Positions 23,431 to 59,900 of a DNA stretch of 64,000 bases are shown in pieces. The stretch comes from Mobula birostris (Eukaryota). A program made the position numbers and the translations under genes. The DNA is taken from the NCBI RefSeq assembly GCF_030028105.1, contig NC_092374.1:180127487-180191486 (forward strand), in the 5' to 3' direction. Positions within the stretch are counted from its first letter, which is position 1; the number at the start of each line of letters is the position of its first letter. The notes below the pieces were generated by a model. The model was not told where the DNA came from. It was given only the letters and a program-made list of their open reading frames with translations, and ran no database searches.

Positions 23431-26400
23431 CTGCTCTGTGACATTGTCTGTCTGAAGTTTTTGCAATGGAATGGCATTGAGATGGTGACGGGAAAATGGG
23501 CTTCATCTCGTGAATTGGTAGCACAGCAGGTAGAGATTCTGCCTCAGGATGCTGGGGACCTGGGCTTGATCTCGACATCTGCCTGTGTGTGGATTTGACA
23601 TGTTCTTCCTGTGACCCTGGGCTCTCTGGTTTCCTCACAAACCCAAACACCGGCTGCTGTAAATTGTGGGTGAGTGGGAAAAACCAGGGGATGTTGATGG
23701 GAATTTGGGGAGACTAAAATGGGATTTATGCCAACAGGTGCTTGACGGTTGGTAAAGACTCAATGGACTGGAGGTCCTGTTTCCACACGGTAGGAAAATT
23801 ATGGTCACTTGGCTGTTTTCTGTGGACAGGGAACATTTGTTCTGTCTCCCTCTGTACCTACTGACACCTTTACCAGCCAAAAGTTGGTGCAAGGATGGCA
23901 AGGGGCACTCTCAGCAGGCCAGCAATAAACCACACCATCATCACACCTCACTCTTAACAGCTCAGTTATCGATCTGCAGTGCCGAGAGAGGCTCCTTTGT
24001 GCAAGTGGCTTCCCACACATTTCAATGCAGTAATGGCTTAGCTGGTGGTTTTACCTCAGCCCAGTGCCTGGGCAGGAGACCAACCAGTGACGTGGCGGGG
24101 GGGGGACGGTTGGACCAGTGACAGGGCTTCCATGTTGGAAGGACTGGTGACAGGGTGGGGCTCCTGTGGTGGACAGATGAGTGACAGGGGAACACTGTTC
24201 TGGTCGGTCTGATGATGGGGACCCCAGTGGTGGACGGACCAGTGATGGGACCAGTGTCAGAGTTCCTGTCACAGATGTAATGGACATACCCATCAAACAG
24301 AATTTCCAAAATGAGCTGCTGTCATTAACTCTCTTCTCCTCAGAATTCCAGTGACCAACTTCCACTCCAGTGGCGAGGTGCCCGGTGACACCAGTGTGGC
24401 TTCCCCAGACTCTACAGTGGGAGCTTGTTGGTCAGAGGGTGGGGATGGCGGGGGGGTGGTGGAAAGGGGCAATCTGTAAAGTAGTTTGGCCAGGAACTCA
24501 TGCTCCTCAACACATTCTCCACTTGGAATGCTCACAGACTGGGAACTCTACCGTGACTGTGTCATGGCTCGTCAAAGAGGTGTTGAGAACAGCCTTGAAT
24601 TCCCCTTAATGACTTCCCTGGAACTCTGCTGCAGAGCTTGGAGCACACACTTCCCGAGTTCGGACTTGAAAGCAATATCACAGCTATACAGGGCAATGGA
24701 AAAGGTGTTTGCCAACACGGGCCCCTATCAGTTGGGGCACCGAATGTGGGAGAAAGAAGAGACTGCGGAGGCTGGATTCTGGAGCAACACACAAGATGCC
24801 GGAGGAGCTCAGCTGGCCAGGCAGCATCTGTGGTGAGAAATGGACAGTGGATATTCCGGGTTGAGAGCCTTCATTTGGACTGAAAGAGGGAGCACAGGTA
24901 GCCGGTATAAAGAGGAGGAGAGAAGGGGTGAAATAAGAGCTGGCAGGCGATTTTCGATCCGGGCAGGAGGGCGATGGTGAGAGGCAGGTGATTCCAGGAA
25001 TGAAAAGCTCAACAATCTCACTCTGCCCCTCCCTCACTTGCCTCTTACACCTTGTAAAGGTGAAGACAAACCAGCTGGGGCATAGAGAGGTGAGCAGACA
25101 TTTTTGCAAGGTTAGGAGAACAACGAACTGTGGAGGAATAGGTTTAAGGTGAGAGGGAAGAAGTTTGAGACCCCAGGGGCAGCTTTTTCACACAGAGGGT
25201 GTTATGCATGTTGAATAAGCTGCCAGAGGAAGTGGTTGAGGCAGGTAGATTGAGGCCCTCCGTTGGTCAGGGGGTGTCGTGTCCCAGTTACCTATGTGAT
25301 ACGCTAGCCAGGGCAGTACGATATGGAGAGCGAGCTGTTGCCCATGTAGCAGGCTCCCCTTTTCCACGCGGCTGATACAGGAACCGCAGGGTCTGATACA
25401 GTTTGGCACCAGTGGTGACGCAGGAGTTGCCAGTCAGCATTAAACTCAACGTAGGACTGCCTCAGGGACTCCAGCTGCAGATTTTTCCCTCCGGGTTTAC
25501 TCCTGAAACCTTCCCCATGAGTGGGTTTAGCTGCAAGGCAGCCAAGGTTCAAGATTGGAATTTTCCTTCCAGATGAGCTGCCAACCACGGCTGACAAGCC
25601 CCAGTTGCTGAAGTGACTGGTTTGAAGACGCAAAGTAACCCACCTTTGCCCCTTCTCCCGTTGGTAGAAATGGTTCTTCCAGCCTTAGAAGCTAAACCAC
25701 ACATGAAGGCCAGGAGCTGGATGGTTGTCAGAGCCTATTTGAGATGCATGCCTTTGGGAGCGTTTAATAGAGAGTGGGAGCTTATTGCCAATACCACCCC
25801 TGCTTATAACAATCTTAAGGAACTAGCAGGCAGGTACATCATCAACATTCAAAATTATTCAACATTCAAATGGCACAGTCTCAGGATAGAGGGCTATTCA
25901 TTCAAAACAGAGATGCAGAGAAATTTCTTTAGCCAGAGGGTGGTGAATTTGTAGAATTTGTTGCTGTGTGCAGCTGTGGAGGCCAGGCCATTGGGTGTAT
26001 TTAAGGCAGAGAATGATAGGTTCGTGATTGGACATGGCATCAGAGGTTACGGGGAGAAGTCTAGGAAATGGGGTTGAGGAGGAGGAAAAAAAGTATCAGC
26101 CATGATTGAATGGTGGAGCTGACTCGATAGGCTAGATGAACTAATTCTGCTCCTATGTCTTATGGTCTTATATATCGTGGGCATAGAGAACCATGGACAC
26201 AACATGGGTAAACAGGATCACAAACAAGAGAAAATCTGCAGATGCTGGAAATCCGAGCAACACACAAAATGCTGGAGGAACTCAACAGGCCAGGCAGCAT
26301 TTATGCAAAAGAGTAAACAGTCGACGTTTCAGGCCTAAGCCTTTCCACAGGACGGAGCCTCGACTGTACTCTTTTCCATATATGCTGCCTGGCCTGCTGA

Positions 26401-27171
26401 GTTCTTCCAGCATTTTGTATTATGGGTAAACAGGATCATAAACATGAGAAAATCTGAAGATCCAAAGCAACACACACAAAATACAGCAGGCTTGGCAGCA
26501 TCTATAGAAACGAGTAAACAGTCAAAGTTTCAGGCCGAGACTCTTCTTCAGGACTCTTTTCCATAGATGCTGACTGGCCTGCTGAGTTCTTCCAGCATTT
26601 TATGGGCAAACAGGATTAGTGTGGAAGTTGCAGCAAGACAAGGGTTAAAATAGTGTGCTGACAGAACAGTGTGCCGATATCGTACAGTGACGGAATAAAC
26701 TCGATTTTGAGAGCATAGCTTCTCTTCCCATAGTTCTTTGTTCAAGTCTGAGACCAAAATGTTACCAGGCATACCAGAAAAAGATAAGGATGAGTACAAA
26801 GGAATGTAGGGCACACAGTAGCTACTGGATAGTAATTCTACTAATTAAGTATTATTGGCCTTTAATGCATAGATTGTATTGGTTATTTACAACTGAAATA
26901 TGTCATGTGGTTTTATCCCTGGGGTCAAGTATGATGTTCTCCTAAGGGGTTGTCTATTGCTGGGTCTTCAGGTGGCTGTATGGACAACCTGGGATCCACA
27001 TAGCCAGGAAGTCTGGATGGATTTCCTTAATGGAGAACACTTGTGTGTAACTTCATGTAATATGGGGAGGCTGATGTATAGACACCCACCACATGGTCCT
27101 TGACAGTTTGGGATCAGGGTTGGGTGGCATGGAATGTAAAATGACTAGGGACCCTTCACTGCCATTGTGAT

Positions 27172-30500: not shown

Positions 30501-30976
30501 TGGAAGGTTTCCAGGGCACAGGCCTCGGCAAGGTTGTATGGAGACCAGCAGTTGCCCACGCTGCAAGTCTCCCCTCTCCACGCCACCGATGTTGTCCAAG
30601 GGAAGGGCATTAAGCTTGGCACTGGTGTTGTCACAGAGCAATGTGTGGTTAAGTGCCTTGCTCAAGGACACAACGCGCTGCCTCAGCCAAGGCTCGAACT
30701 AGTGACCTGCAGATCACTAGACGAACGCCTTAACCACTTGGCCACGTGCCTGTAGTGCTACACATCAGCAATATGCCAAATCTACAATCTGACACATTTG
30801 TAATTGTACATTTCTGACATCTGACAGGATACACACTCTTTTGTTGTCTCTGTGTTGGACAGTTCTGGCTGTTAATGTGATTTCTCTGCTCTAGTACAAT
30901 CTGACTTGCTGGAGATGTCCATAACACCAGCCTTCCATTCCAGTTCCAGAAGGAAACATGCAGAGGTCTTCTCAAA

Positions 30977-31187
30977 TCAAGGAGCGTTGGCTTGGAATGA
31001 TGAGCTGGTACAGCCCTGGAGTCTCTTGGTCCTCATCCTAATCGAACCACCAGTCTGGGGAAGCAAAATTGGTCACATCAGATCCAGGGTCAACTGCACT
31101 TTTCCATCCCACCTCCCTCAGACCCGCCCTCTTCCACTCTACCTGCCCCATCATCCCCCTCCTCCCATACCGGCACTCCCCGGTAAC
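30977..31187 (-). CDS. Tentative gene 1 cytoplasmic exons: 31171-31187 (GYRGVP) and 30977-31054 (TGGSIRMRTKRLQGCTSSSFQANAP*)
   Basis: Phase-compatible pair with plausible splice sites (cttcgaag|GTTAC...GCCG|gtatgg; ttttgcttccccag|ACT...TGA), but no homology to the gene 2 tail, so unverified. Confidence 0.3.
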
Positions 31188-31575
31188 CTTCGAAGCAGAC
31201 AGCGAAGTACATCCATGACAGACACAGTACAAATATGTACTGGGGCAGCCCGCAGGTGTTGATGTGCTTTCAGCACTCACATACCATGTCCCCAACCTAC
31301 TAATTCCGATCTGTACACTTTTGTAATGTGGGAAGAAACTGTAACATCCCAAGGAAACCCACACGGTCACAGGGAGAACGGACAAACTCCGCACAGACAG
31401 CCACGTAACTGAACCTGTGCAGCTGGCCCTGAACAGCATTACACTTACCAGTACACTAGCATGCTGCCACTGATACTCTCCTGCATCAGAACCTTCCCCT
31501 ACCCCCACAGACCCTCAGCTATACCTTCCCCACACCCTCCCTGCTCCCTCTGCCCAGTTCCCTTCCCAGCCATAC

Positions 31576-31719
31576 CTCGCCTTCTGCAGCTGGCACCGAT
31601 AATGAAGATAATGATGATGGAAATGGCCCTGATCCCGAAGAGTGGAATCCAGCACAACCCACTGAAAATGCTGGAGCTACTGAGCAGGTCAGGCTGTATC
31701 CAAGGTTGAGTTCCCTGCA
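31576..31719 (-). CDS. Class I gene 1 stalk/TM exon ([48 protein letters not shown])
   Basis: tctttccccag|TG...CGA G|gtatgg; 144 nt; both ends align with the gene 2 TM exon (acceptor ccccag, donor GGCGAG|gta). Confidence 0.8.
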
Positions 31720-34700
31720 CTGGGGAAAGAATCAGAGAGGGTGTCTGAGACACAGGCCCCACAATCACACAGGGTACACTGCCCCGTGTGGTAACATTAC
31801 AGGGCACGCTGCCCCGTGCAGTAATGCCATGGGGCACACTGGCCCGTACTGTAATATCAAGTGGTACAGTACACTGTACAGTAATATTACAGGGTACACT
31901 GCACCATATGGTAATATTACAGGGCACACTGCCCTGTACTGTAATAATACAGGGCCCACCGCCCTGTACTGTAATAATACAGGGCCCACCGCCCTGTACT
32001 GTAATATTAGAGGGTACATTGCTCTGTACTGTAATAATATAGGGTACACGGCACAGAAAAAGTAATATTACAGGGTACACGGCCCTGTACTGTAATATTA
32101 CAGAGTACATTGCACTGTATTATAATAATACAGGGTACACTGCACTGTACTGTAATAATACAGGGTACACTGCCCTGTACTGAAATATCACAGGGTACAC
32201 AGCACCATACTGTTATATTACAGGGTACACTGCCCTGTACTGTAATATCACAGGGAACTCTGCCCTGTGCAGTAATCACCTCGGATACAACTGCCACTGC
32301 TCCGTACTGTCCCCTGTCGCAGGATAAACCAAGCCCTGCTCTATCCTGTTCCTGGATACCAGGGATTTGACCTCACTTTGAGCAGCGGCAAACTGGAGAT
32401 CAGAACCCTGAGAAGACGCAGCTCACTCAGGCTTGCCAACTGAGTCGAAAAGCTAGCGACTCATGGCAGTTTAGTGCTTTGAGCAGTGGCCTATCAGCAT
32501 TTGGGATAGATTGGCAAGAACAAATTAAATTAAGGCAGGGGCAAGCAGAGTGGCCACTGTTAGAGTGGTCACATTTTAGCTCTTCAAGGCTTCATCAGGT
32601 GAGGCTTCAGTCAGAGAAGGCAAAAAAGCTGTAGATAGAGTTTCCACCCCCACCCCAACAGTTTATTGTTCTTCCTTCTTTACATTTGCTCAGTTAGGAC
32701 AGTAGAGATGCCAGGCAGAATAGTGACATGCTCCTCTTGAGCGGTGTGGGAAGGCAGGGAGACCTCCAGTGACCCTGATGACAAGTGCATCCTGCTGCAG
32801 TTTCTAGCAATCCGCATTGAGGGGTTGGAGCTGGAACTGGATGAACTCTGGATCATTTGAGAGGCTGAGGGGGTGATAGACAGGACTAATAGAGAGGTAG
32901 TTACACTCAAGGTGCAGGACACCGGAAACTGGGTGACAGTCAGGAGGGAGAAAGGGGCTAAACAGCCAGTACAGAGTACCCTGTGGCATCCCCGTCAACA
33001 ACAGGTATATCTCTTTAGATACTGTTCGAGGGGTTGACCTAGCAGAGGAAAGTCACAGCAGTCAGGTCTCTGGCACTGAAACTCAAATGGGAAGGGGTGG
33101 GGGGAAGAAGAGGCAAGCTGTGGTGACAGGCGATTCATTAGTTAGGAGAACAGAAAGGAAGTTCCGTGAACGAGAATGAGATTCTCGGATGGTATGTTGC
33201 CTCCCGGGTGCTAGGGTCTGGGATATCTTGGATTGAGTTCTCAGCATTCTTAAGTGAGGGGATGAATAGCCAGAGGTTGTGGTCCATGTAGGTACCAATG
33301 ACAGGGGTAGGACGAGTGACGAGGGTCTGCAAAGTGAGCTCAGGGAGTTGGGAGTTGGCAGACCTCCAGGCTTGTGATCTCAGGATTGCTACCTCCACCA
33401 CGTGCTACTGAGGCCAGAAATAGGAAGAATATATAACTTAATATGCGGCTGAGGAGCTGGTGAAGGAGGCAGGACATTAGAGCTTTGGATCATTCGGCTC
33501 TCTTCCAAGGAAGCTGGGTTCTGTTTAGAAGAGATTGTTTGCACCTGAACTGGATGGGGACTAATATCCTAAAGGGGAAGTTTGCCAATGCTGCACGGGA
33601 AGGGGGGCGGGGTGCTAAAACTAGAGTTGTAGGGGGATGTGAACCAGAGTGCCAGAGCAGATAGTGCAGAGATTGTGGAGATACGTTGTTATTGAGACCT
33701 CAGATATAGTCAGGAATCAAAAGATTAAACATGATGTGACTAATGTTCTGAGCTTGTATATTTCAATGCAAGAAGTTTATAGGAAAGGCAGATGACTGCA
33801 GGGCTTGGATCAACATATGGAATTATGATAAGCTAGCCATTAGTGAGACTTGGTTGCAGGAGGGGCAGGACTGCCAGCTCAATATTCTGGGGTTCCATTA
33901 TTTTAGATGTGACAGAATGGTGGGGGGGATTAAACAAGGAGGGGTGGCGTTATTAGTCAGGGAAAATATCAAGGCAGTGCTCAGTCAGGACAGACTGGAG
34001 AACTCATCTAGTGAGGTGTTGTGGGTGGTACTGAGTAACAAGACTATATAAATATGGCTATATTACAGATCACCCAACAGTCTGAGGGATTTAGAGGAAC
34101 AAATTTGTAGAGAGATCGCAGACTGTTGCAAGAAATATAAGATTGTTTTAGTAGGTGATTTTTAACTTTCCAAATATTCCTATACTGTAAAGTTACTAGA
34201 TGGGATAGAATTTGTCAAATGTCGTAAGGAACGTGTCCTTAATCAGTACATAAAAGTCCCAATGAGAGAGTGTGCAATACTTGACCAGCTATTAGGGAAT
34301 GAGACAGGGCAGGCGACAGAAGTTTGTGTAGGGGAACACTTTGCATCTAGTGATCATAATGCCATCTGCTTCAAAGTCAATATGCAAAAAGACAGGTCTG
34401 GTCTGCAGATTGTGATTCTAAATTGAAGAAAGGCCAAATTTGATGGCATCAGAAAGGATCTGGCAAGTGTGAATTGGGACAGGCTATTTTCTGGTAAAGG
34501 CGTGATGCCTTGAAAAGGGAAACCCTTAGAGTAGAAAGCTTGTATGTGCCTGTCAGAATAAAAGGTAAAGATAACAGGGCAGGGTACCTTGGTTTTTAAG
34601 AGATATTGAGGCCCTGGTTAAGAAAAGCAGGTATAGACAGGGAGGAACAAATGAGGAGCTTATGGAGTACAAGAAATGAAAGAGAACACCTAAGGAAGAA

Positions 34701-37700
34701 ATTGGGAAGCGTAAAAGAAGGCAGAAAGTTCCTCTGGCAGATAAGGTGAAGAAGAATCCCAAGGAATTCCACAGAGCAAAAGAGGTGGGGGAGATCTTAA
34801 ATGAATTCTTTGCATCTGTTTTTACTCAGGAGACGGACACAGAGTCAATAGAAGTGAAGCAGAGTAGCATCAACTTTATGGACCCTGTATAACCCTGTAT
34901 AGATTACAGAGGAAGTTGTGTTTGCTGTCCTTAGGGCAAATTGTCCTGTCCAAGGCCGAAAGAAGCTGCAGAAGATCGTGAACGTGGTGCAGCACATCAC
35001 AAAAACCAATCTTCTGTCCTTGGACTCACTTTACACCGCACGCTGTTGGAGCAGTGCTGCCAGGATAATCAAGGACACAACCCACCCAGCCAACACACTT
35101 TTCGTCCCTCTTCCCTCCGGGAGAAGACTCAGGAGCTTGAAGGCTCGTACGGCCAGATTTGGGAACTGCTTCTTTCCAACTGTGATAAGACTGCTGAACG
35201 GATCCTGACCCGGATCTGGGCCGTACCCTCCAAATATCCGGACCTGCCTCTCGGTTTTTTTTGCACTACCTTACTTCCCATTTTTCTATTTTCTATTTAT
35301 GATTTATAATTTAATTTTTTTATATTTACTAATTTTTACTGTTTTTAATATTTAATATTTGTAATCCAGGGAGTGGGAAGCGCAGAATCAAATATCGCTG
35401 TGATGATTGTACGTTCTAGTATCAATTGTTTGGTGACAATAAAGTATAAAGTATAAATTAAAATCCCCTGGCCCTGACAGGGTGTTTCCTCAGACCCTAT
35501 GGGAGGCAAGTGCTGAAATTGCTGGGGCCCTAGGTGATACATTTAAATCATTCTTAGTGACGGAGAGGTACCAGAGGATTGGAAGATAGTCAATATTGTT
35601 CTGCTGTTTAAGAAAGGTTCTAAACAGAAACCAGGAAATTATAGGCCGGTGAGCCTGACATCAGTAGTGGGAAGGTTATTGGAAAGTATTCCAAAGGACT
35701 GGATATATAAGTATTTGGATAGATATGGACTTACTAAGTATAATCAGCATGGTTTTGTGCATGGTAGGTAGTGTCTAACCAATCTTACAGAATTTTTTGA
35801 GGAAGTCACCAGGAAAATTGATGAAGGCATTGCAGTGGATGTTGTCTACATGGACTTTAGTAAGGTATTTGATAAGGTCCCACATGGGAGGTTGGTCAAG
35901 AAGGTTCAGTCGGTTGGCGTTCAAGATGAGGTAGTAAATTAGATTAGACATTGGCTGTGGGAGAAGCCAGAGAGTGGTAGTATACAGTTGCATCTCTGAC
36001 TGATGACCTGTGACTAGTAAAGTGTTGCAGGGATCAGTGCTGGGTCTAATGTTGTTCCTCATCTATACCAATGATCTGGATGATAATGTGGTTAACTGAA
36101 TCAGCAAATTTGCAGATGACACCAAGACTGGGTTGTAGCGGACAGCGAGGAAGACTCTCGGTACTTGCAATAGATTACAGGCCATCTGGAAAAATGGACT
36201 GATGGAATTTAATGCAGACAAGTACGAGGTGTTGTACTTTGGTAGGACCAACCAGGGTAGGCTTTATAGAATGAATGTTAGGGCACTGAGGAGTGCGGTA
36301 GAACAAAAGGATTTGTGAATGGAGACCACAATTCATTGAAAGTGGCATCATAGGTAGATAGAGTCATAAAGAAAGCTTTTGGCACATTGGCCTTTGTAAA
36401 TCAATGTACTGGGTGTTATGTTGAAGTTGTATAGGACGTTGGTGCGACCTTATTTGGAGCATTATGTGCAGTTCAGGTCACCTACCCACAGGAAAGATGA
36501 ACTAAGGTTGAAAGAGACAGAAGATTTTCAAGGATGTTGCCATGCCTGGAAGATCTGAGTTATAAGGAAATGTTAAATAGGTTAGGACTTTATTCCTTGG
36601 AATGTAACAGATTGCGAGGAGATTTAATAAAGGTATACAAAATTATGAGGGGTATAGACAGGGCAAATGCAAGCAGGCTTTTTCCACTGAGGTTAGGTGG
36701 GACTACTAAAGGTCATGGGTTGAGGGTGAAAGGTGAAGAGTTTAAGGGGAATATGAAGGGAAACTTCACTCAGAGGGTGGTGAGAGTACGGAATGAGCTG
36801 CCAGCACAAGTGGTGTATGCAAGATCGATTTCAATGTTTAAGAGAAGTTTGGATAGTAGGGATAAGAAGGGCTATGGTCCCTGTGCAGGTCGATGGGAGT
36901 TGGCAGTTCCAATGGCTCAGCATGAACTAGATGGCCCGAAGGGCCAGTTTCTATGGTCTGCTTTTCTGTGACTCTACCTGAGTATCTGAGGATCTCCCCC
37001 AGCACAACTCTGGGACCCTCAGACACCTCGCCCCCACTCTCTACTGCCCCACTCGCGAGCGCACACGTGTGTTCTTGGACCCTCCCCCATGGCAACCGAC
37101 CAGCTCACCGTAATTCCAGATGATGGGATCCTTCAGTCCGCTGTGCCCCACCTGACAGGAGAACGATGCCGGGTCCGCGGGATCAATCTGCACCCACTTC
37201 CGGATCTGGTATGTGCCATTGTGATTGGGCAGGAGCCCAGTGGAGTGGGCCTCAGGGAGGATGGTCCCATTCTTCCACAGGGTCACCTCAATGGATGAGG
37301 GGCGGAAGCCAGTGGCCAAGCAGGAGAGGGCGCTGGTGTCGGCTGACAGGGTGAAGGTCACCTGGGGAGGTTCTGAGGGGAAGGAAGATGGGTGAGTGTT
37401 GATTCTATAGGGATAGAGACACCCCCAACCAGAGAGACAGAAAGAGAGAAAGAGACCCCAAAGAGGGGGAACATGGTGGAGTCCATCACACACACACACA
37501 GATCGATAGAGACCACCCAATCCTATCTCTTTATGATACTCTAACGTGCACGCACGCACACAACTGGAGACAATTTCTCATCTCTGCTCCCTGAACCCCA
37601 CACCCTCACATACCTCTCACTCCTGCCTCGCCCACACCTTCTTCCTAACTGCCCCCCGTCACCCCTTCACCCCCCCCATTCACTACAACCCACCACCCTC

Positions 37701-40700
37701 ATCAGCGATGTTCAGTTCCCTACCCCAATATCCCGGAATTGCAACCTCCCCCGACCACTCACCCACTCGCAGTTGCTTCCTTCCGTAAGCCAGGAACTTC
37801 CTCAGCCACCGGACACAGTCCACCTTCAGGAAGTACTTCCATTTCCCAATGTTGACCATGTCCTGATCCCACTGGTGTTTAATTCTCTCTGCCCACATTA
37901 CAAATGCGTCCCACTCTGTGTGGTCCTTGTCCAGGCTCAGCAGGTCGTCTCCATCCCAGCTGTACTGAGTGAAGCCTTTCGTGGTCCCATTCTCCCTCAG
38001 GTCACAGCCAATCACCTGCTGGAGTGTGTGGATTTCTGTCAACAACATAAGAAGTCGGCGAATGTTTAACGAAACTCATGGTTCTTGTTCTGTGTTCAGA
38101 GAAGCACACGTGTCCAGTCAAAGGACCCTTAAATAAATGAGACCATCTGTATGGACTCACAGAGCTAGAAAAAGGCCTTTCAGCCCATCACATCTATGCT
38201 GATGTCTCATCCCGCTTAAGTTCATTTTACCCAGGGTATCAATACTTTGTGCAGCAGGAGCACAGCACATGAAAAACACAATGGAGATAGTTTAACATGT
38301 ACTTGAATTAACATAAATTATGCACCACTAAACATAAGGACACTTGTACAAGCTGATGGAGAAAAGAAATACAGTCCTCTTGTAGATGTCCTTGATGGTG
38401 TGAAGGGCTGTACCTGTGATAGAACTGGCTGAGTTTACCTCTCTCTGCATCCTCTTGTGTTCCTGTGTACTGGAGTTCTTTCATACCAGGCAGTGATGCT
38501 TTCCACCGTACATCGGCAGAGGTTTGTCAGAGTCTTTGGTGAAGTGCAGAATCACCTAAACTTTTAAGAAAGGAGGGACATTGGCATGCTCTCATTGACG
38601 GTTGCGTCTAAGTGCTGGCTTCAGGATAGACCCTCTGAGATGTTGCTTCAATGACCCTTCACCGTAAGCCTTTCGGTGAGGACTGGTGTGTTCCCAGTAC
38701 TTGGTCCATAACTGAGTTCTGCCTTACAATTCAAGTGCTCACCCAGAGAATTAATGTTGTGGACAGCTAACTAATCTATTAATTGCATGCCTAAACTAAA
38801 TTAATGCCCTCTGCCTTCACAACAACCGAATCCTCCAATTCCCAGCACAATCATGTACCTACGAAGAGTCTCTTCAGCAGCTCCAGTATTTCTGCCTCCG
38901 TCACCACTGCAGGCAGTGCTTTTCAGGCACCCACCACTCACCATGCACATCTCCTTTCAACTTACCCCTCCCACTGGGAATGCATGCTTTTCGACCCTGG
39001 GAGCAAGATGCTATCTGTCTCTCTGTTTATACCTCTTGTAAACATACAGTAAATCAGGGCTTCCCTCTGCCTCCACTGTCCAGAGAAAACAACCCAAGTT
39101 TGTCTCACCTTTCCTTACGGCACGTGGCCTCTAATCCAGGCGGCATTGTGGCAAACATCTTCTGCGCCGCCTGCCAAGTCTCCATATCCTTACCACAACA
39201 GAGTGACTGCAACTGAATCTCCTGTAATTTGCACTGCCCCAATTTCATACCCTCCTGCAGGGTCTACACTTCCCCTTATCTATAGCTCTCTTAAAACTTA
39301 AGGAACAGTGATCTCCATTGCTTAAACGTTTTCCCACAGAAAGGTCAGTCACCTGACCAGGCTGATTTTGCAGCCTTGGATGCCATATATCCCCTCCTTT
39401 AGTTGGACTATTTACACTTACTTAAGGACCCATCCCCAGTTGTCCCTAACAAATAAACCCCATGCACTAAGGAGGTCCCCGTTTATATTGAGGAAACTGA
39501 AGTAACTCCCAACAACAAAACCTTTTGTTTTCCCGTCTTCCCTGAATCTGCCCGCATGCCTGTTTCTCAACGGCTATTGAAGGGTCTGTTGTTTGTTGTC
39601 CCATTAGGTTGCTTGCACCTTTCTTATTCTGAGTTTTATTCCTATACACTCAGTGGCCACTTCATGAGATATGTCTTGTACCTCAGACAGGAGTGCTGCT
39701 GCTGTATCCTAACCATTTTAGGGTTTGAGGAGATGTGTGTTCAGAGATGCCCTTCTGTAAGCCACTATGGTAACACATGGTTAGGGTTACTGTATCCTTC
39801 CTTTTCTGCTTGAACCTGTCTCAACAATCTCCTCTGACTTCTCTCATTAACAAGGCAATTTCAGTCACAGAATGCCTCCCACTGGATGTTTTCTGTTTTT
39901 CACGCCATCCTCTGTAAACTCTAGAGAACGTTGTGAGTGAAAATCCCAGGAGATCACTTTCTGAGATACTCAAACCATCCAGTCTGACACCAACAATCAT
40001 TCCACGGTCAAAGTCATTTAGATCACATTTCTTCCCAAATCTGATGTTTGATCTGAGCAACAACTGAACCTTTTGACCATGTCTGCATGCTTTTATGCAT
40101 TGAGTTGCTACCACATGATTGGCTGATTAGATATTTGCATCATTAAGTGTACCTAATAAAGTGGCAACTGAAGTTAGACTCAGTGGGTGAGCCCTCAGTG
40201 ATGTCCCCTCTGAACACTCTGCTGTGATATTGTCCCCGATTAATATTGCAGCTCTTGGCCCTCCTTTACCTTCTCATTCTGGCTTCTCGCTCATGATGGA
40301 AGGGTCTTGGCCCAAAATGTCAACCGTTCATTCCCTTCCGTAGACTCTTGCTCTCATTGACCTCCCATTCTGTTATGATACACACCCAACTGCTCCAGCT
40401 TCCGACATTTAGACCTCTAACTCTCTGGAATACGGCTAGCTGGCGCGGCCCCTTTAAGAGTTCAGGACTATCCTGCTAACTGGCAATCACAGTTTGGGCA
40501 CCAAGAATTCAGTACTTAAAGAGACCTGAACCGAGGTTCAGTGCTCAATGGTGAGCCTAACTAGAAATATTGTCTAGCACAGCCCTTCTCAACCTCCTTG
40601 CCCTGGAGAAACCGTTGAAATAGTTTTCAGATCTCAGGGAACCCCTATGTAAAAATTATTATATCTACAGCTCACGGTACGTTAGTGTGATCAGTAATTT

Positions 40701-43700: not shown

Positions 43701-46700
43701 CAACAGAACCTGTCATTACCTGTTACAGGAGTGCTACGCATGTACGATTGAGTGTAGATGAGCGAGAGCGAAAACCATCAAACCCAGAGGAGACCAAAGT
43801 TGAGGTACAAGAATGGTCAGCCTTTGATTTCTCCGCAATTGCAGATTCTGACTTCACATTAGGCGATGAACAAGTTAATGCCTTATGTCTAAAATATCAT
43901 GATTTTCTGGCTGAAAATATTGTAATAGTTAGACAGTTTAATGATTTCAAATTTTCCGTGCAAGAAAAAATTAAATCCAAATTGATTTCAAACTTTGCTC
44001 AGATGGTGGCACTTGTACTTCAAAATGAACAGCTTTGCCACCTTGCACAGTTGATGGACATTGGGGGAACCTTTCTTGCATCTAGTGCGGACTGTGAGCG
44101 AGATTTTAGCCTAATGAATCAACTCAAAAACAAGCTGAGAAACCGTTTAGGTGAATGTCATTTGATATGTTAATGAGAATCAAAAGCTATCAATGCCATG
44201 GAAGTTCTATTAGTCGCGATAGAGTTTACAAAGAATAGGTAAATGCCAAAGACAGGAGAGAGAAAAAAATAACTGAGTGACTTAAATATGATAAAAATTA
44301 AATATTTCCAACCTGATGGCATGAACATTGACTTCTTTAACTTCCGTTAATGCCCCTCCGCCTGTTCGTACCCCATCCCTTATTTATTTATTTATTATTA
44401 TGATTTTTTTTCTTTCCCTTTTTTCTCTCTTTTTCCTCCCTCTGTCCCTCTCACTATAACTTCTTGCCCATCCTCTGGGCTTCCCTCCTCCCCCTTTCTT
44501 TCTCCCTAGGCCTCCCATCCCATGATGCTCTCCCTTCTCCAGCCTCGTATCCCTTTTGCCAATCAACTTCCCAGCTCTTAGCTTCATTCCCTCCCTTTCC
44601 TGTCTTCTCCTATCATTTTGGATCTCCCCCTCCCCATCCCACTTTCAAATCTCTTACTATCTCTTCTTTCAGTTAGTCCTGACGAAGGGTCTCAGCCCGA
44701 AACGTCGAATGTACCTCTTTCTATAGATGCTGCCTGGCCTGCTGTGTTCACCAGCATTTTTTGTGTGTGTGACTTCAATATGTATGTTATTTCGTTGTTA
44801 TTCTGTGCAGTTTTATGTCAAGTATTTTGTAAACCTACATAAACTATCCCACCAACACACATCAAAGTTGCTGGTGAACGCAGCAGGCCAGGCAGCATCT
44901 CCAGGAAGAGGTACAGTCGACGTTGCGGGCCAAGACCCTTCGTCAGGACTAATTGAAGGAAGAGCTAGTAAGAGATTTGAAAGTGGGAGGGGAGGGGAGA
45001 TTCAAAATGATAGGAGAAGACAGGAGGGGGAGGGATGGAGCCAAGAGCTGGACAGGTGATTGGCAAAAGAGGTATGAGAGGATCATGGGACAGGAGGCCC
45101 AGGGAGAAGGAAAAGGGGGAGGGGGGAAAACCCAGAGGATGGGCAAGGGGTATAGTCAGAGGGACAGAGGGAGAAAAAGGAGAGAGAGAGAAAGAATTTG
45201 TGTATATAAATAAATAACGGATGGGTTATGAGGGGGAGGTGGGGCATTAGTGGAAGTTAGAGAAGTCAATGTTCATGCCATCAGGTTGGAGGCTACCCAG
45301 ACGGAATATAAGGTGTTGTTCTTCCAACCTGAGTGTGGCTTCATCTTTACGGTAGAGGAGGCTGTGGATAGACATGTCAGAATGGGAATGGGATGTGGAA
45401 TTAAAATGTGTGGCCACTGAGAGATCCTGCTTTCTCTGGCGGACAGAGCATAGGTGTTCAGCAAAATGGTCTCCCAGTCTGCGTCGGGTCTCGCCAATAT
45501 ATAGAAGGCCACATCAGGAGCACCGGACGCAGTATATCACCCCCGCCGACTCACAGGTGAAGTGTCGCCTCACCTGGAAGTACTGTTTGGGGCCCTGAAT
45601 GGTGGTAAGGGAGGAAGTGTAAGGGCATGTGTAGCACTTGTTCCGCTTACAAGGATAAGTGCCAGGAGGGAGATCAGTGGGGAGGGATGGGGGGGACGAA
45701 TGGACAAGGGAGTCGTGTAGGGAGCGATCCCTGCGGAAAGCAGAGAGTGGGGGAGGGAAAGATGTGCTTAGTGGTGGGGTTCCGTTGGAGGTGGCGGAAG
45801 TTACGGAGAATCATATGTTGGACCCGGAGGCTGGTGGGTTGGTAGGTGAGGACCAGGGGAACCCTATTCCTAGTGGGGTGGCGGGAGGATGGAGTGAGAG
45901 CAGATGTGCGTGAAATGGGGGAGATGCGTTTAAGAGCAGAGTTGATGGTGGAGGAGGGGAAGCCCCTTTCTTTAAAAAAGGATGACATCTCCCTCGTCCT
46001 GGAATGAAAAGCCTCATCCTGAGAGCAGATGCGGCGGAGACGGAGGAATTGTGAGAAGGGGATTGCATTTTTGCAAGAGACAGGGTGAGAAGAGGAGTAG
46101 TCCAGATAGCTGTGAGAGTCAGTAGGCTTATAGTAGACATCAGTGGATAAGCTGTCTCCAGAGATAGAGACAGAAAGATCTAGAAAGGGGAGGGAGGTGT
46201 CGGAAATGGACCAGGTAAACTTGAGGGCAGGGTGAGAAAGCAGGATCTCCCAGTGGCCACACATTTTAATTCCACATGTCATTCCCATTCTGACATGTCT
46301 ATCCATGGCCTCCTCTACTGTAAAGAGAAGCCACACTCAGGTTGGAGGAACAGCACCTTATATTCCGTCTGGGTAGCCTCCAACCTGATGGCATGAACGT
46401 TGACTTCTCAAACTTCCGCTAATGCACCACCTCCCCCTCGTACCCCATCCGTTATTTATTTATATACACACATTCTTTCTCTCTCTCTCTCTCCTTTTTC
46501 TCCCTCTATCCCTCTGACTATACCCCTTGCCCATCCTCTGGGTTTTTCCCCCCCGTCCCCCCTTTTCCTTCTCCCTGGGCCTCCTGTCCCATGATCCTCT
46601 CATATCCGTTTTGCCAATCACCTGTCCAGCTCTTGGCTCCATCCCTCCCCCTCCTGTCATCTCCTATCATTTTGGATCTCCCCCTCTCCCTCCCATTTTC

Positions 46701-49700
46701 AAGTCTCTTGCTAGATCTTCCTTCAGTTAGTCCTGACGAAGGGTCTCAGCCCGAAACATCGACTGTACCTCTTCCTAGAGATGTTACCTGGCCTGCTGCG
46801 TTCACCAGCAACTTTGATGTGTGTTGCTTGAATTTCCAGCATCTTCAGAGTTCTTAGTGTTTACATTTTTAAATAAACTGTCCCATGTGTGCATTCAGTG
46901 CGCACATACATTTGTCACAGGAAAAAGATTTGCACAACATAAGATTTTTGCGCACACTGACTACTAAAAATTAGAGGGAACATTGGTCTGGAGCCTCAGG
47001 ACCCAAAACACTATGTTTAGAAACAGTTATTACCCCTCAGCCATCAGGTTCTTGAGCAAGAGGGGATAACTTCACTCAACTTCACTCGCCCCATCACTGA
47101 ACTCTTCCCACAAACTGTAGACTTACTTCCAAGGACGTATGATAATGTACATGTACTTTGATAATAAATGTAGTTTGAACTTTTAAATTTAAAATACATG
47201 TTGACAACATCTACCACCCTGCCCTTATCAATCCTCTTCAAAAATTAATCACATTTGTGAAGCAGGATTTTCCACACACACATCCATGTAAATTACCCTT
47301 TATCAGTCTTTACCTTTCCAAAACCTGGTAGATCCCTCATTATTGCCTTATGTCTACTGGCACCTTCCTTGTTGTAATGTAGATATATTACAACACCCCA
47401 TTGCTCATTTCCCTTCACTCATTAACTTCCAAAACATTCTCCGCAAATACAGATGAAAAATATTCATTTAGCACCTTGGCCATCTCCTGTGGCACTTCAG
47501 AATGATGACCACACCGAACCTAAAAGGGACTATGCTGTCCTTGGTTAGCCTTTTGCTCTTTTACTTCTAGAATCTCAGTAAATTACCTCTATTTGTGGTG
47601 TCAGTCTGCTACTGAAGGAGAATTCCAGATATTTGTCACTTCCATTCTGAATACTTATAGAAGTACATATCCTGACATTCAATATTAGTCACCCCATAAT
47701 TTTTTGGGGGAGGGGACACGTGTAACCTAAGGGCCTGTGTCCTATGAGACAGTCTCACAACACTTGGTTCAAATAGACCACCATGAGTGGCATTGGTGCC
47801 TCATTAACTGGATAACACGGTGAATGTACTGATGGGCATTGTGCTCACTCTGAATAATTTTATGAATAAAAGTTAATTTTGAAATTAAAACCAAGTTGTC
47901 TGCAGGTTCAATTCTTGCCCGTCACTCCGCCACGTTTGAAGCACTGACCAGCCACTCACTTAAATCTAATCACTGGGAAACATGTGTTGACTGATTTGAT
48001 GCAAAGATTCAACCCCAATTTATAAAAGTCACGCTGAAATTAAACTAGTCAGATAGGGACTCACCACCCAACTGATTGGTCAAAGACGTTATGAAGAGAA
48101 TAAGTTTTTTCTGGGTCCTCTCCCACTCCTCAGCAAGTGACAACTTCTTCTGCCATTCGGCCCCCTCGCTCTTCACCATCCACTGCTCCTGGGGAACCAG
48201 CTTCCGCTTACTGTCGTAAACCACAAACTGGACACTATCCACATTGGTGACAGCCACTAACTGTGGAAAATCCGGAATCTCAGTCACGGACGTCAGGAGA
48301 ATTCGGAGAGAGTGAGATTCTGAAACAAAGAGAGAGGGGAAAATCAGGGCACAAAACAAGGTAACCTATCGCAGCCGATACAATGCGGAGACAAAGTCAC
48401 AGGCTGGTTCCTTACTGGGTTCCATTATCCCCGTCTGCTGTCAGCCTCCTAACACAGGGAAGTAGTCGATGATTTCCGTGATCCCGCCTGAAGCCCTTGT
48501 GCTCCAGTGGTCAGTTTGTTGGAGACGAGACGTAACATAACATCACAATAGGGAACATGTCACTGGGGCAATGACACAGCCTTATCCGACGTTGGTCTTC
48601 ACAGAGGTTGCTGTAGGTCGGGATGCGCACGCACACGCTCAACACACAGATCGTCACACATATTCCTGTTCCAATTAGACAGGGAAGTTATAGTGGGGTA
48701 CAGGAACCATGGTGTACAAAGGCTGGAATAAATCTAGTCAAGAAGAAAAGAAAAGCTAACAAAAGGTTCAGAGATTTAGAGATCTAGAAGATTATAAGGC
48801 TAACAGGAAGGAGCTTAAGAAGGAAATTGGGAGAGCCAGAAGGAGCCATGAGAAGGCCTTGGCGGGCAGCATTAAGGGAAACCCCAAGGCATTCTACAAG
48901 TATGTAAAGAGCAAGAGGATAAGACGTGAAAGAACAGGACCTATCAAGTGTGACAGTGAGAAAGTGCGAATGGAACCGGAAGAAATAGCAGAGGTACTTA
49001 GTGAATACTTTGCTTCAGTATTCACTGTGGAAAAGGATCTTGGTGATTGTAGTGATGACTTGCAGCAGACTGAAAAGCTTGAGCATGTAGATATTAAGAA
49101 AGAGGATGTGCTGGAGCTTTTGGAAAGCATCAAGTTGTATAAGTCACTGGGACCGAATGAGATGTGCCCCAGGCTACTGTGGGAGGCAAAGGAGGAGATT
49201 GCTGAGCCTCTGGCGATGATCTTTGCATCATCAATGGGGACGGGAGAGGTTCCAGAGGATTGGAGGGTTGTGGATGTTGTTCCTTTATTCAAGAAAGGGA
49301 GTAGGGATAGCCCAGGAAATTATAGACCACTGAGTCTTACTTCAGTGGTTGGTAAGTTGATAGAGAAGATCCTGAGAGGCAGGATTTATGAACATTTGGA
49401 GAGGCATAATATGATTAAGAATAGTCAGCATGGCTTTGTCAAGGGCAGGTCATGCCTTACGAGCCTGATTGAATTTTTTGAGGATGTGACTAAACACATT
49501 GATGATGGTAGAGCAGTAGCTGTAGTGTATATGGATTTCAGCAAGGCATTTGATAAGGTACCCCATACAAGGCTTACTGAAAAAGTAAGGAGGCATGGGA
49601 TCCAAGGGGACATTGCTTTCTGGATCCAGAATTGGCTTGCCCACGGAAGGCAAAGAGTGGTTGTAGACGGGTCATATTCTGCATGGACGTCGGTGACCAG

Positions 49701-56980: not shown

Positions 56981-59900
56981 CTGAGAGAGGGAGAGACAGA
57001 CACACAGACCCACGAGGAGTTTATCGTCACATAATCAAGGGGGAGGAGAGGAGCACTGATATTGAACTTACTCCGTGTGGCATTGTACTTCCTCTTCACT
57101 CCCACTGCGAAAACAAGGAGACCTGGTGAGTGCAGCTGATGGACTGGGATAGACAAAACTGACCCCCACAGACTCCACCCCTCCCTTTAGGATCCTCACA
57201 CTCTACCCCATCTCTCTCCATTTAGAACGCTCACACTCCCCCAAAGGATGCTCCCCCCATCTCTTCCAACTCCCCTTTAGAACCTTCACACTCCCCCAAC
57301 AGACCCTCCCCTCATCTCTCCCAACCCTCCCCCTCCCCCAACAGATCCTCCCCTCATCTCTCCCAACCCTCCCCCAACAGATCCTCCCCTCAGCTCTCCC
57401 AACCCTCCCCCTCCCCCAACAGATCCTCCCCTCATCTCTCCCAACCCTCCCCCTCCAACAGATCCTCCCCTCATCTCTCCCAACCCTCCCCCTCCCCCAA
57501 CAGATCCTCCCCTCAGCTCTCCCAACCCTCCCCCCTCCCCCAACAGATCCTCCCCTCATCTCTCCCAACCCTCCCCCTCCAACAGATCCTCCCCTCATCT
57601 CTCCCAACCCTCCCCCTCCCCCAACAGATCCTCCCCTCAGCTCTCCCAACCCTCCCCCTCCCCTCATCTCTCCCAACCCTCCCCCAACAGATTCTCCCCC
57701 ATCTCTCCCAACCCTCCCCCTCCCCCAACAGATCCTCCCCTCATCTCTCCCAACCCTCCCCCTCCCCCAACAGACCCTCCCCTCATCTCTCCCAACCTTT
57801 TAGAACCCTCACACTCCCAACAGATCCTCTCCTCACACTCCTCCCAACAGATCCTCCCGTCATCTCTCCCAACCCTCCCCCTCCCCCAACAGATCCTCTC
57901 ATCTCTCCCAACCCTCCTTTAGAACCCTCCCCCTCCCCCAACAGACCCTCCCCTCATCTCTCCCAACTCCCCTTTAGAACCCTCACACTCCCAACAGATC
58001 CTCCCCTCTCTCCCAACTCTCCCCCTCCCCCAACAGACCCTCCCCTCATCTCTCCCAACTCCCCTTTAGAACCCTCACACTCCCAACAGATCCTCCCCTC
58101 TCTCCCAACTCTCCCCCTCCCCCAACAGACCCTCCCCTCATCTCTCCCAACTCCCCTTTAGAACCCTCACACTCCCAACAGATCCTCCCCTCATCTCTCC
58201 CAACTCTCCCCCTCCCCCAACAGATCCTCCCCTCATCTCTCCCAACCCCCCTTTGGAACCCTCACACTACCCCAACAGATCCTCCCCCCATCTCTCCCAC
58301 CCCCCCATGCTCAGTTCTCCCCAGCCCTACCTCGCCACCTGTACACAGCACCAATGGTGATGGCCAGAACCATGAGGATGGCCAGGAGCCCGACTATTAA
58401 TAGGATCCGGGATTGAGCTTCCCGCTCTGGGGAGAGAATTGGAGAGGATGTAGGAAGTTCACAGTTACACAGGCCGCAATCACCAAGGGCACACCACACT
58501 GTATTTTTAATTGCACCGGCTACACCACCCTGTGTGGTAATTTGCCAAGAAGCACTGGCCACGACTGTAATAACACAGCACACCAGATCAGACTGTAATG
58601 ACCAAGGTCTGGCCACCTGTCAGACTACGGAATGCACCAATCTGCCCTGGAATAACCCACTGACCTGCACTGAAATAATTCAGGATACAGGTGTCCCCCG
58701 CTTTTTGAACGTTCACTTTATGAAACCTCACTGTTACGAAAGACCTACATTAGTACCCTGTTTTCGCTTTCAGAAGGTGTTTTCACTGTTATGAAGAACG
58801 GCAGCGCGCCACAAAAAAACAGCGCGCCATAAAAGGCAGCGCGCCCCGAGCAGCCGCTCTGCCCCGGATTCGGAACGGCATTGCTTAAACACGTTGCATT
58901 GAGCAGCCGTTAGCAAGATGAGTCCTAAGGTGTGGGAAAAGCCTGAAAGAGTAAGAGTGTTACACTTAGCGTAAAACTAGACATAATTAAGCATTTCGAT
59001 CGTGGTGAACAAAGCAAGGACAAAGTGAGTTTGGCTTGTGGAAGCTGACGAAGATGATGATGAAGAGGTTTTGGCATCCCATGACCAAGAACTGATAGAT
59101 GAAGAGCTGATGCAGTTGGAAGAGGAAAGGATAACAATCGAAACCAAATGCAGAAAGTGAAGCAGCTGCGTGAGATTTTCGCTGCAATGATAAAGTACGA
59201 CTTTAATTTTGAAAGGGTACGTAGCTTTAGGGGATATTTGCAGGATGGTTTGAGTGCTTACAAACAACTGTATGATAGAAAAATGCGCGAGGCTCAGCGG
59301 TCAAGCAAGCCTTCCACATCAGCCACAGCAGACGACAAACTTCGACCTTCGACATCGAGGCGGGCAGTCATAGGAGAAGATGAGTTGCCTGCCCTGATCG
59401 ACGATGAGATGACACCCCCGTGTCCCACCACCCCGACAGCCGGGCCCCGGACAGATACTGTACCGATTCGCGAAGAACGCAGTGGTAGCTGGGAGGCACA
59501 CAGCACATCTTTAAGAAAAATGCCCAAATAAACATGCTAAATAATTAGGTGCCGCCTGGCACGTAATTGTCGACCCAGATCAGAGGCGATGCAATTGGCA
59601 ATCTGCGCCGACATTTACGTGCCGGGCAGCACCTAATTAATTAGCATGTTTATTTTGGCTTTTTTCTTAACGATGTGCTGTTTGCCTCCCAGCTACCGCT
59701 GTGTTCTTCGCGGCAATGTATCGGGTCGGCGGCCCGGAGGGTGGGGGCCACTGCACCACCCAGCCTGCGATGACTCAGCCTAACACACCATCATCAGTGT
59801 GCTCAGCGCTGTTTTCCCAATTCCGGTAAGTGATACTCACTGTACATACATTACTTCTACTTTATATAGGCTGTGTATTTTTATGTGTTATTTGGTAGAT

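What the first reader, a model, noticed from the sequence alone, without database searches (positions are those of the whole stretch)
31647..31702. Penelope pLTR fragment exonised in frame inside the class I gene 1 TM exon
Seen: the gene 1 TM exon is 144 nt versus 96 nt in gene 2, and the ends align (VQGTQPWI vs KREAQSRI; IGA..RRR vs IGA..RWR). The extra ~51 nt (cagcctgacctgctcagtagctccagcattttcagtgggttgtgctggat) closely resembles the abundant pLTR segment ctgcctggcctgttgagttcctccagcattttgtgtgttgctcggat (e.g. reverse complement of about 26240-26300) and is bracketed by TGGAT on both sides. It keeps the frame and adds [16 protein letters not shown], including a new Cys. Inference: a retroelement fragment was co-opted as a longer stalk or extra hydrophobic segment with a potential dimerising Cys.
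Basis: partly seen in the sequence, partly recalled or inferred. Interest (0 to 1): 0.7.

Follow-up and report, generated by a model that had tools for sequence, protein, structure and literature searches.

The report
Retroelement-derived insert in ray MHC-I stalk
A 51-base piece of a Penelope-like retroelement repeat was copied, in frame, into the stalk/membrane exon of a divergent MHC class I gene in an ancestor of manta rays and stingrays; it is still transcribed and spliced today, a tidy but not surprising case of transposon-derived coding sequence.

Summary
The window is Mobula birostris. Gene 1 is XP_072115087.1, a divergent MHC class I gene on the minus strand. Its connecting-peptide/TM exon (31576-31719) is 144 nt, against 96 nt in gene 2 and in two Pristis relatives. 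The flanks are homologous and the only difference is one clean 48-column gap.

The extra segment matches a profile built from 13 other repeat copies in the window (27 bits, E=2e-7). None of 20,000 shuffled exons came close. The repeat is a Penelope-like element terminal repeat (pLTR): it carries a minimal hammerhead core and flanks a PLE ORF fragment.

In all 4 runs laid, a contig joins the a3 exon directly to the full 144-nt exon (GT..AG, 0 mismatches). Orthologues in M. hypostoma, Hemitrygon akajei and an unnamed ray transcriptome also carry the insert. A tree places a single insertion on the stem of the gene 1 clade. The original insert was 51 nt (17 codons); M. birostris later lost one Phe codon.

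The "dimerising Cys" is not conserved. It is also not exonisation by splice-site capture: the copy landed inside an existing exon, probably templated through GAT/GGAT microhomology. The likely effect is a longer Ser-rich stalk. This is a new member of a known kind. Two first-stage notes on other DNA of this genome also read these repeats as Penelope pLTRs.

The parts
31576..31719 (-). Connecting-peptide/transmembrane exon of class I gene 1 (144 nt, phase 1-1)
   Evidence: AG/GT boundaries read. 100% identical to residues 290-336 of XP_072115087.1. Covered end to end with 0 mismatches by spliced contigs in 4 runs.
31647..31697 (-). pLTR-derived insert: the 51-nt unit from after the first TGGAT through the second TGGAT. 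The alignment gap against insert-free exons is 31648-31695. It encodes [16 protein letters not shown].
   Evidence: nhmmer profile hit 31700-31643, 27.0 bits, E=2e-7. 0 of 20,000 shuffles reach it. 48-column gap in gene 2 and two Pristis exons.
37109..37372 (-). Alpha-3 exon of gene 1, whose donor is joined to the TM exon in RNA
   Evidence: The joint 37109->31719 skips 5389 nt with GT..AG on the minus strand in runs X1-X4.
37763..38035 (-). Alpha-2 exon of gene 1
48063..48317 (-). Alpha-1 exon of gene 1 (coding core; boundaries within a few nt)
   Evidence: tblastn with shark class I proteins. 100% identical to P0169 residues 26-109.
31038..31054 (-). Coding start of the terminal exon of gene 1 (completes D, then WWFD and stop). 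The 3'UTR runs on about 316 nt.
   Evidence: Acceptor AG at 31056-31055 and the sequence read. The P0169 C-terminus is DWWFD. Contigs extend about 333 nt past the TM exon.
58331..58426 (-). TM exon of gene 2 (96 nt), the insert-free paralogous site with a single CGGAT
   Evidence: Gene 2 is P0270, XP_072115084.1.
26234..26315 (-). Other copies: 24762-24839(-), 26367-26425(+), 26454-26515(-), 26553-26616(+), 11109-11183(-), 11226-11269(+), 1444-1500(-), 44713-44778(+), 44846-44912(-), 46767-46850(+), 62235-62319(-), 62741-62807(+).
   Evidence: nhmmer hits; alignment printed.
44679..44706 (+). Intact minimal hammerhead core (CTGACGA, helix II, GAAAC, GTC) just 5' of a pLTR arm
   Evidence: Pattern search (0 expected by chance). 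The related box CCCGAAACGTCGAC lies next to 7 arms. Sequence read.
45674..46336 (-). Penelope-like element ORF fragment lying between inverted pLTR arms
   Evidence: 761 homologues with E<=1e-5. Listed hits carry PF26215, some together with PF01541 (GIY-YIG) or PF00078 (RVT_1). Atlas look-alikes are HTH_animal +/- RVT_1.

Best explanation
Gene 1 is a transcribed, divergent (probably nonclassical) MHC class I gene of Mobula birostris. In an ancestor of mobulid and dasyatid rays, a 51-nt internal stretch of a Penelope-like-element terminal repeat (pLTR) was copied in sense orientation into the existing connecting-peptide/TM exon. This happened after the gene 1/gene 2 duplication. The copied stretch lies 20-75 nt 3' of the pLTR's minimal hammerhead. 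The copy landed at a ..TGGAT|CCCACTC.. site. The donor stretch is itself bounded by GAT and GGAT in the pLTR. The simplest mechanism is therefore a microhomology-primed templated insertion (break repair or replication template switch), not a retrotransposition event. That step is inferred. The insert kept the frame, so the TM anchor survived. It lengthens the membrane-proximal stalk from about 8 to about 25 residues. The conserved core is QP.L..SSS.FS...W: a polar Ser-rich spacer followed by a few interfacial residues that abut the ancestral TM helix. The exon is spliced normally through its ancestral splice sites. The segment evolves fast, like the rest of this exon. It is most likely a tolerated stalk extension that raises the ectodomain further from the membrane, not a new interaction or dimerisation module.
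For: Shown: gene identity, with 100% identity of four exons to XP_072115087.1. Shown: homology of the exon and its flanks to gene 2, with one 48-nt gap, and the same gap in two 96-nt Pristis exons. Shown: homology of the insert to the repeat (27 bits, E=2e-7; 0/20,000 shuffles; six-frame matches such as PGLLSSSSIL in several copies). Shown: PLE identity of the repeat, from the minimal hammerhead core at 44679-44706 and the core box beside 7 arms, and from an ORF between inverted arms whose homologues carry GIY-YIG/RT domains. This matches the published description of min-HHRs in pLTRs, including inverted pairs 100-700 bp apart (PMC4209133). Shown: transcription and splicing. The joint 37109->31719 has GT..AG ends and the full 144 nt lie with 0 mismatches in contigs of 305 nt (X1) and 1271-1330 nt (X2-X4), one in each of the 4 runs. 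Shown: age. The insert is present in M. hypostoma, Hemitrygon akajei and a further ray transcriptome, L001. The gene 1 clade has 100% support; gene 2 pairs with Pristis P0188 (96%); every sequence examined outside the clade (gene 2, Pristis P0185 and P0188, shark P0012) lacks the insert. The pLTR family also exists in Pristis (29.5 bits). Hydropathy places the TM core in the ancestral part. Inferred: microhomology, since GAT/GGAT sits at both ends of the matched stretch in the pLTR profile and GGAT sits at the empty site of gene 2.
Against: The insert is short and about 22% diverged from the profile. In the L001 orthologue the profile hits the same place only weakly (5.4 bits). The repeat profile comes from this window only; no curated PLE consensus was available. 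No genomic DNA could be fetched for Hemitrygon or M. hypostoma, so their insert is known only at protein level. The runs are labelled 'RNA?' by guess and all come from one study. Contigs cannot show how often the exon is skipped, and RefSeq predicts skipping isoforms X4 and X5. High dN in the exon (0.26 against 0.07-0.10 in a1-a3) gives no sign of constraint on the insert. Length conservation could simply reflect the need to keep the TM in frame. The mechanism of insertion cannot be proven from an event this old.
Confidence: 0.8

Rival explanations
1. Classical PLE integration into the exon with a 5-bp TGGAT target-site duplication, followed by loss of most of the element so that only 46 nt plus the duplicated site remain.
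For: TGGAT direct repeats lie exactly 51 nt apart, and insert-free exons have a single (C/T)GG(AT/CT/CC) site. PLE copies are abundant around and inside the gene.
Against: The retained piece is internal to the pLTR and carries neither end of the element. Both GAT/GGAT motifs belong to the pLTR consensus itself, so they need not be a duplication of the target. An in-frame remnant after a large deletion inside a 96-nt exon requires two lucky events.
Confidence: 0.12
2. Adaptive co-option as proposed by the first reader: the insert provides a dimerising cysteine or an extra membrane-active segment that changes how the molecule is displayed or signals.
For: The insert is retained in frame with fixed length in four species. 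The QP.L..SSS.FS...W positions are conserved. The neighbouring TM carries an unusual Arg (GIRAIS) in Mobula and Hemitrygon.
Against: The Cys is absent in Hemitrygon and shifted in L001. 7 of 16 residues differ between Mobula and L001, nearly all by nonsynonymous changes (sequences; exon-wide dN). There is no second hydrophobic peak. Frame retention is enforced anyway by the downstream TM.
Confidence: 0.1
3. Chance resemblance: the extra 48 nt arose by ordinary indel or duplication and merely looks like the repeat.
For: The match is short, and the orthologue in L001 scores poorly against the profile.
Against: E=2e-7 in a window-wide search with a profile that excludes the exon. 0/20,000 shuffles reach it, maximum 13.6 bits against 27.1. 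The weak L001 hit falls at exactly the orthologous position. The insert does not resemble the adjacent exon sequence.
Confidence: 0.03
4. The long form is ancestral, and gene 2 and the Pristis genes lost 48-51 nt.
For: Two-sequence comparison alone cannot polarise an indel.
Against: Gene 2, both Pristis genes and the shark outgroup P0012 have the short connecting peptide. The tree would need at least two or three independent identical deletions. The segment is also homologous to a dispersed repeat.
Confidence: 0.02

Closest known systems
TE-derived coding sequence / TE exonisation (e.g. Alu exonisation in primates)
   Same: A fragment of a dispersed retroelement now forms part of a translated, spliced exon and is retained across species.
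   Different: Classical exonisation recruits an intronic TE as a new cassette exon through TE-borne splice sites. Here a 51-nt internal TE fragment sits inside an ancestral constitutive-type exon and uses the ancestral splice sites. The donor is a Penelope-like element pLTR, not a SINE or LINE.
Penelope-like element pLTRs with minimal hammerhead ribozymes (Cervera and de la Pena 2014, PMC4209133)
   Same: The donor repeat has the CUGANGA...GAAAC-GUC minimal core with no helix III. It occurs as inverted pairs a few hundred bp apart and flanks an ORF related to GIY-YIG/RT proteins.
   Different: The exon holds only the stretch 3' of the ribozyme. No hammerhead core is present in the exon, so no ribozyme activity is expected in the mRNA.
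Templated insertions at repaired breaks (microhomology-mediated end joining or template switching)
   Same: A short insert copied from elsewhere, bounded by 3-5 nt of identity between donor and target at both junctions.
   Different: Inferred only from junction sequences of an ancient event. No direct evidence for the repair pathway.
Elasmobranch nonclassical MHC class I lineages (UBA, UDA, UEA, UFA; PMC10751288)
   Same: Gene 1 and gene 2 are tandem, divergent class I genes of a batoid clade. That clade is sister to a shark clade containing Heterodontus O19480 and Ginglymostoma O19479.
   Different: Assignment to a named lineage was not tested. A UBA assignment is my recollection only. None of the papers read mentions a lengthened connecting peptide.

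Membership tests
Penelope-like element pLTR (donor repeat) | Minimal type-I hammerhead motif in the repeat | tested here: met
   One intact core at 44679-44706, with 0 expected by chance. The core box lies next to 7 arms. Helix I pairing CAGTC/GACTG read by eye. Rfam hammerhead models gave no hit, as expected for motifs that lack helix III.
Penelope-like element pLTR (donor repeat) | Repeats flank an ORF with RT and GIY-YIG endonuclease | tested here: inconclusive
   Only an ORF fragment (45674-46336) lies between inverted arms. Its homologues carry PF26215, some with PF01541 GIY-YIG or PF00078 RVT_1. No complete RT-EN ORF is present in the window, and Pfam in this copy gave no hit on the fragment itself.
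Penelope-like element pLTR (donor repeat) | The exon segment is homologous to the repeat | tested here: met
   27.0 bits, E=2e-7. 0/20,000 shuffles reach it.
Penelope-like element pLTR (donor repeat) | Match to a curated PLE consensus (Repbase/Dfam) | not testable with these tools
   No repeat library is available here.
Classical TE exonisation | The TE supplies a splice site or forms a new exon from intronic sequence | tested here: not met
   Acceptor, donor and both exon ends are homologous to gene 2 and Pristis exons. The insert is internal.
MHC class I heavy chain | Alpha-1/alpha-2 MHC_I domain plus C1-set alpha-3, connecting peptide/TM exon, phase-1 exon structure | tested here: met
   PF00129 and PF07654 are precomputed for P0169. 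Exons a1, a2, a3 and TM were located. Phase-1 junctions read.
Classical (peptide-presenting) class I | Conserved peptide-terminus-binding residues (Y7, Y59, Y84 and others) and polymorphism | tested here: inconclusive
   By eye, alpha-1 reads SHSLRILLT (Ile at the Tyr7 position) and lacks the Tyr59 position. No formal residue mapping or polymorphism test was done.
Target-site duplication of a retroelement insertion | A direct repeat that is single-copy at the empty site and absent from the element itself | tested here: not met
   GAT/GGAT is also present in the pLTR consensus at both ends of the copied stretch.

The most novel reading that the evidence does not exclude
The pLTR-derived 17 residues were exapted as a functional Ser-rich stalk that sets the height or flexibility of this class I molecule above the membrane, possibly with O-glycosylation. 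Alternatively they work together with the unusual intramembrane Arg (GIRAIS) to pair the molecule with a partner chain. Either way, purifying selection on the QP.L..SSS.FS...W positions would have kept them across myliobatiform rays.
Probability: 0.2. Interest if true: 0.5.

Novelty: new member of a known kind. Interest (0 to 1): 0.33.

Why it matters
This is a clean, datable example of a retroelement fragment becoming translated sequence inside an immune receptor gene. The donor family, empty sites, orthologues and transcript evidence are all in hand. It also illustrates a route into coding sequence that is less often documented than splice-site capture: a short templated copy inside an exon. 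For ray immunogenetics it marks a lineage-specific class I gene with a long stalk, an Arg in the TM and a 5-residue cytoplasmic tail, which deserves functional study. It does not change any general concept: TE-derived coding segments are common, and the connecting peptide is the most indel-tolerant part of class I molecules.

Tried and rejected
- Rfam at gathering and at E<=5 found no hammerhead family. The only hits were spurious miRNA-hairpin matches to the inverted repeats.
- Pfam found only generic RVT_1 in other LINE fragments and nothing on the PLE ORF fragment.
- The representative-library search with alpha-3 gave only relatives of about 50% identity. The real orthologues came from a profile search scaffolded on a shark protein.
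- An alignment that included the TM pieces scattered them across the scaffold and was discarded.
- Hemitrygon genomic DNA could not be fetched: the service was busy twice, then the file was too large.
- The first look-up of sequencing runs attempt was busy.
- The species of run SRR6291316 (L001) could not be identified from the paper library.
- ARAGORN found no tRNA in the tRNA-like stretch of the 3'UTR.
- Considered and rejected: a tandem duplication of neighbouring exon sequence (no similarity); deletion in gene 2 (tree and outgroups); a second TM segment in the insert (hydropathy).
- No structure or complex prediction was run.

Full report
WHAT IS THERE

On the minus strand, 31719-31576 is a 144-nt phase-1 exon with AG at 31721-31720 and GT at 31575-31574. 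It encodes [48 protein letters not shown].

tblastn places the other gene 1 exons as follows:
- alpha-3 at 37372-37109
- alpha-2 at 38035-37763
- alpha-1 at about 48317-48063, roughly 10 kb upstream

The gene 2 exons are at 60701-60441 and 61557-61288, and its 96-nt TM exon is at 58426-58331.

All four gene 1 exons are 100% identical to P0169 = XP_072115087.1, 'class I histocompatibility antigen, F10 alpha chain-like isoform X1' of Mobula birostris (341 aa). Gene 2 is XP_072115084.1. The exon is therefore already part of a RefSeq model. What is not annotated is where its extra part came from.

THE LENGTH DIFFERENCE IS ONE INSERTION

Aligning the two Mobula exons with about 100 nt of intron on each side gives clearly homologous flanks and a single 48-nt gap in gene 2. 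I fetched two related Pristis pectinata genes (P0188 and P0185; loci L002 and L003). Both have 96-nt exons with the same gap.

A maximum-likelihood tree gives a 100%-supported batoid clade made of two groups:
- {Pristis P0185, (Mobula gene 2, Pristis P0188; 96%)}
- a 100%-supported gene 1 clade {Hemitrygon akajei P0186, transcript L001, (M. birostris, M. hypostoma)}

Sharks are the sister group. Every member of the gene 1 clade has the extra residues. Gene 2, both Pristis genes and the shark protein examined do not. One insertion on the gene 1 stem explains this. It happened after the gene 1/gene 2 duplication, which itself predates the Pristis-Myliobatiformes split, and before mobulids and dasyatids diverged.

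M. hypostoma and Hemitrygon read LFFG where M. birostris reads LFG. The original gain was therefore 17 codons (51 nt), exactly the spacing of the two TGGAT motifs (exon nt 18-22 and 69-73). M. birostris later lost one codon.

THE INSERT COMES FROM THE REPEAT

One repeat copy (26215-26320, minus strand) used as nhmmer query finds 13 other places in the window, plus the exon at E=1e-3. A profile built from the 13 other copies, with the exon left out, hits 31700-31643 at 27.0 bits and E=2e-7 for the whole window. None of 20,000 dinucleotide shuffles of the exon exceeds 13.6 bits.

Translated in the exon's frame, several copies read P(G/D)LLSSSSI(L/F). The orthologous cDNA L001 is more diverged, with a longer branch and 26% nucleotide difference in this exon. 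There the profile's best hit in the contig still falls at the orthologous position, but only at 5.4 bits. The family also exists in Pristis (L003:159-202, 29.5 bits), so it is old enough to have been the donor.

THE REPEAT IS A PENELOPE-LIKE ELEMENT pLTR

About 15-20 nt 5' of the arms lies the box CCCGAAACGTCGAC, found next to 7 arms. One copy keeps a complete minimal hammerhead core, CTGACGA-helix II-GAAAC-GTC, at 44679-44706, with a CAGTC/GACTG helix I in the better-preserved copies.

Cervera and de la Pena (PMC4209133) describe exactly such helix-III-less hammerheads in PLE pLTRs, including pairs on opposite strands 100-700 bp apart. That is the arrangement seen at 44686-44939 and 62235-62807.

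Between inverted arms at 44846-44929 and 46750-46850 lies an ORF fragment (45674-46336). It has 761 homologues; the listed ones carry PF26215, some together with GIY-YIG or RVT_1. Rfam and this Pfam copy gave nothing, and no curated repeat library was available. The family assignment is therefore well supported but not formally closed. Two first-stage notes on other parts of this genome make the same reading.

THE EXON IS EXPRESSED AND SPLICED

Four runs of one study hold the exon. I laid them on 31450-37420. Each run has a contig whose alpha-3 piece ends at 37109 and continues at 31719 through 31576 with 0 mismatches and 0 gaps. The contigs are 305 nt in X1 and 1271-1330 nt in X2-X4. The skipped 5389 nt have GT..AG ends on the minus strand. 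The three long contigs run on 529-587 nt 5' of alpha-3 and about 333 nt 3' of the TM exon.

The run type is only a guess on record, but a spliced 1.3-kb contig in small assemblies from four samples is cDNA. L001 is an independent transcript from another species. No alternative acceptor appeared among the joints listed.

RefSeq does predict isoforms that skip the exon: X5 (293 aa) and X4 (296 aa). Gene 2 has a skipping isoform too. Contigs cannot give proportions.

HOW IT GOT THERE (INFERRED)

The copied stretch is internal to the pLTR and carries neither end of the element. In the pLTR it is bounded by ..AGAT| and |..CGGAT-TTCCA. At the target the insert-free exons read ..C(C/T)GG(AT/CT/CC)-CC(C/T)A... 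Both junctions therefore share 3-5 nt, and at the 3' side up to about 8 nt, between donor and target.

A microhomology-primed templated insertion fits this better than a PLE integration with a 5-bp target-site duplication followed by loss of nearly the whole element. I give about 0.12 to that rival.

WHAT IT DOES (INFERRED)

Hydropathy puts the single TM core in the ancestral part ([19 protein letters not shown]). The first ~10 inserted residues are polar and Ser-rich, and the last six abut the membrane. The conserved positions among the four species are QP.L..SSS.FS...W.

The Cys is present in both Mobula species, absent in Hemitrygon (SEWRW) and shifted in L001 (SCWHW). A conserved disulfide role is therefore unlikely.

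Between Mobula and L001, 7 of the 16 inserted residues differ, with only one synonymous-only codon. The exon's dN is 0.26, against 0.07-0.10 for alpha-1 to alpha-3. The fixed length is expected anyway, because a frameshift would destroy the anchor.

My reading is a tolerated extension of the stalk from about 8 to about 25 residues. I keep about 0.2 for a selected spacer function.

VERDICT

It is wrong or unsupported on the cysteine and the extra hydrophobic segment, and loose on 'exonised'. This is an ordinary kind of event (TE-derived coding sequence), nicely documented in an unusual gene and from an unusual donor.

Noticed in passing
window 31038-31054 (minus) and L001:969-1012: Gene 1 splices from the TM exon straight to a terminal exon, giving a 5-residue cytoplasmic tail (DWWFD). 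The L001 orthologue appears to use the same terminal exon in another frame. The predicted Hemitrygon protein keeps a conventional ~30-residue Ser-rich tail.
   Followed up: partly
window 31625-31645 (minus), residues GIRAIS of the TM: An Arg sits inside the predicted TM helix in M. birostris, M. hypostoma and Hemitrygon, where gene 2 and Pristis have Leu (GLLAIL/GLLVAL). L001 lacks it. Charged TM residues often mark pairing with a partner chain.
   Followed up: no
window 31769-32276: A 30-nt minisatellite (16.9 copies, 79% matches) fills the intron immediately upstream of the TM exon acceptor.
   Followed up: partly
window 44679-46850: A decayed Penelope-like element: inverted pLTR arms, one intact minimal hammerhead core (44679-44706), and an ORF fragment related to HTH/GIY-YIG/RT proteins that are very numerous in Hypanus sabinus and in metagenome-derived animal contigs.
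   Followed up: yes
window 34850-36850: TE fragments in the 5.4-kb alpha-3/TM intron, including a 145-aa ORF at 36534-36971. I recognise this ORF from memory as a CR1-like LINE C-terminus. These fragments attract very deep contig coverage (word depth up to about 50,000) from genome-wide TE transcripts. This is not evidence of intron retention.
   Followed up: no
window 48063-48317 (minus): The gene 1 alpha-1 domain reads SHSLRILLT (Ile at the Tyr7 position) and lacks the usual Tyr59 region. This suggests a nonclassical, possibly non-peptide-binding groove. Alpha-1 lies about 10 kb upstream of alpha-2.
   Followed up: partly
window 30690-30750 (minus): A tRNA-like stretch (GGCCAAGTGGTTAAGGCG...GGTCACTAGTTCGAGCC) lies just beyond or at the end of the gene 1 3'UTR, probably a SINE head. 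ARAGORN called no tRNA.
   Followed up: partly
P0266 (Mobula hypostoma XP_062905765.1, 738 aa) and P0001 (654 aa): Some predicted ray and shark class I proteins are fusions of two tandem class I genes. These are probably gene-model read-throughs in these tandem clusters.
   Followed up: no
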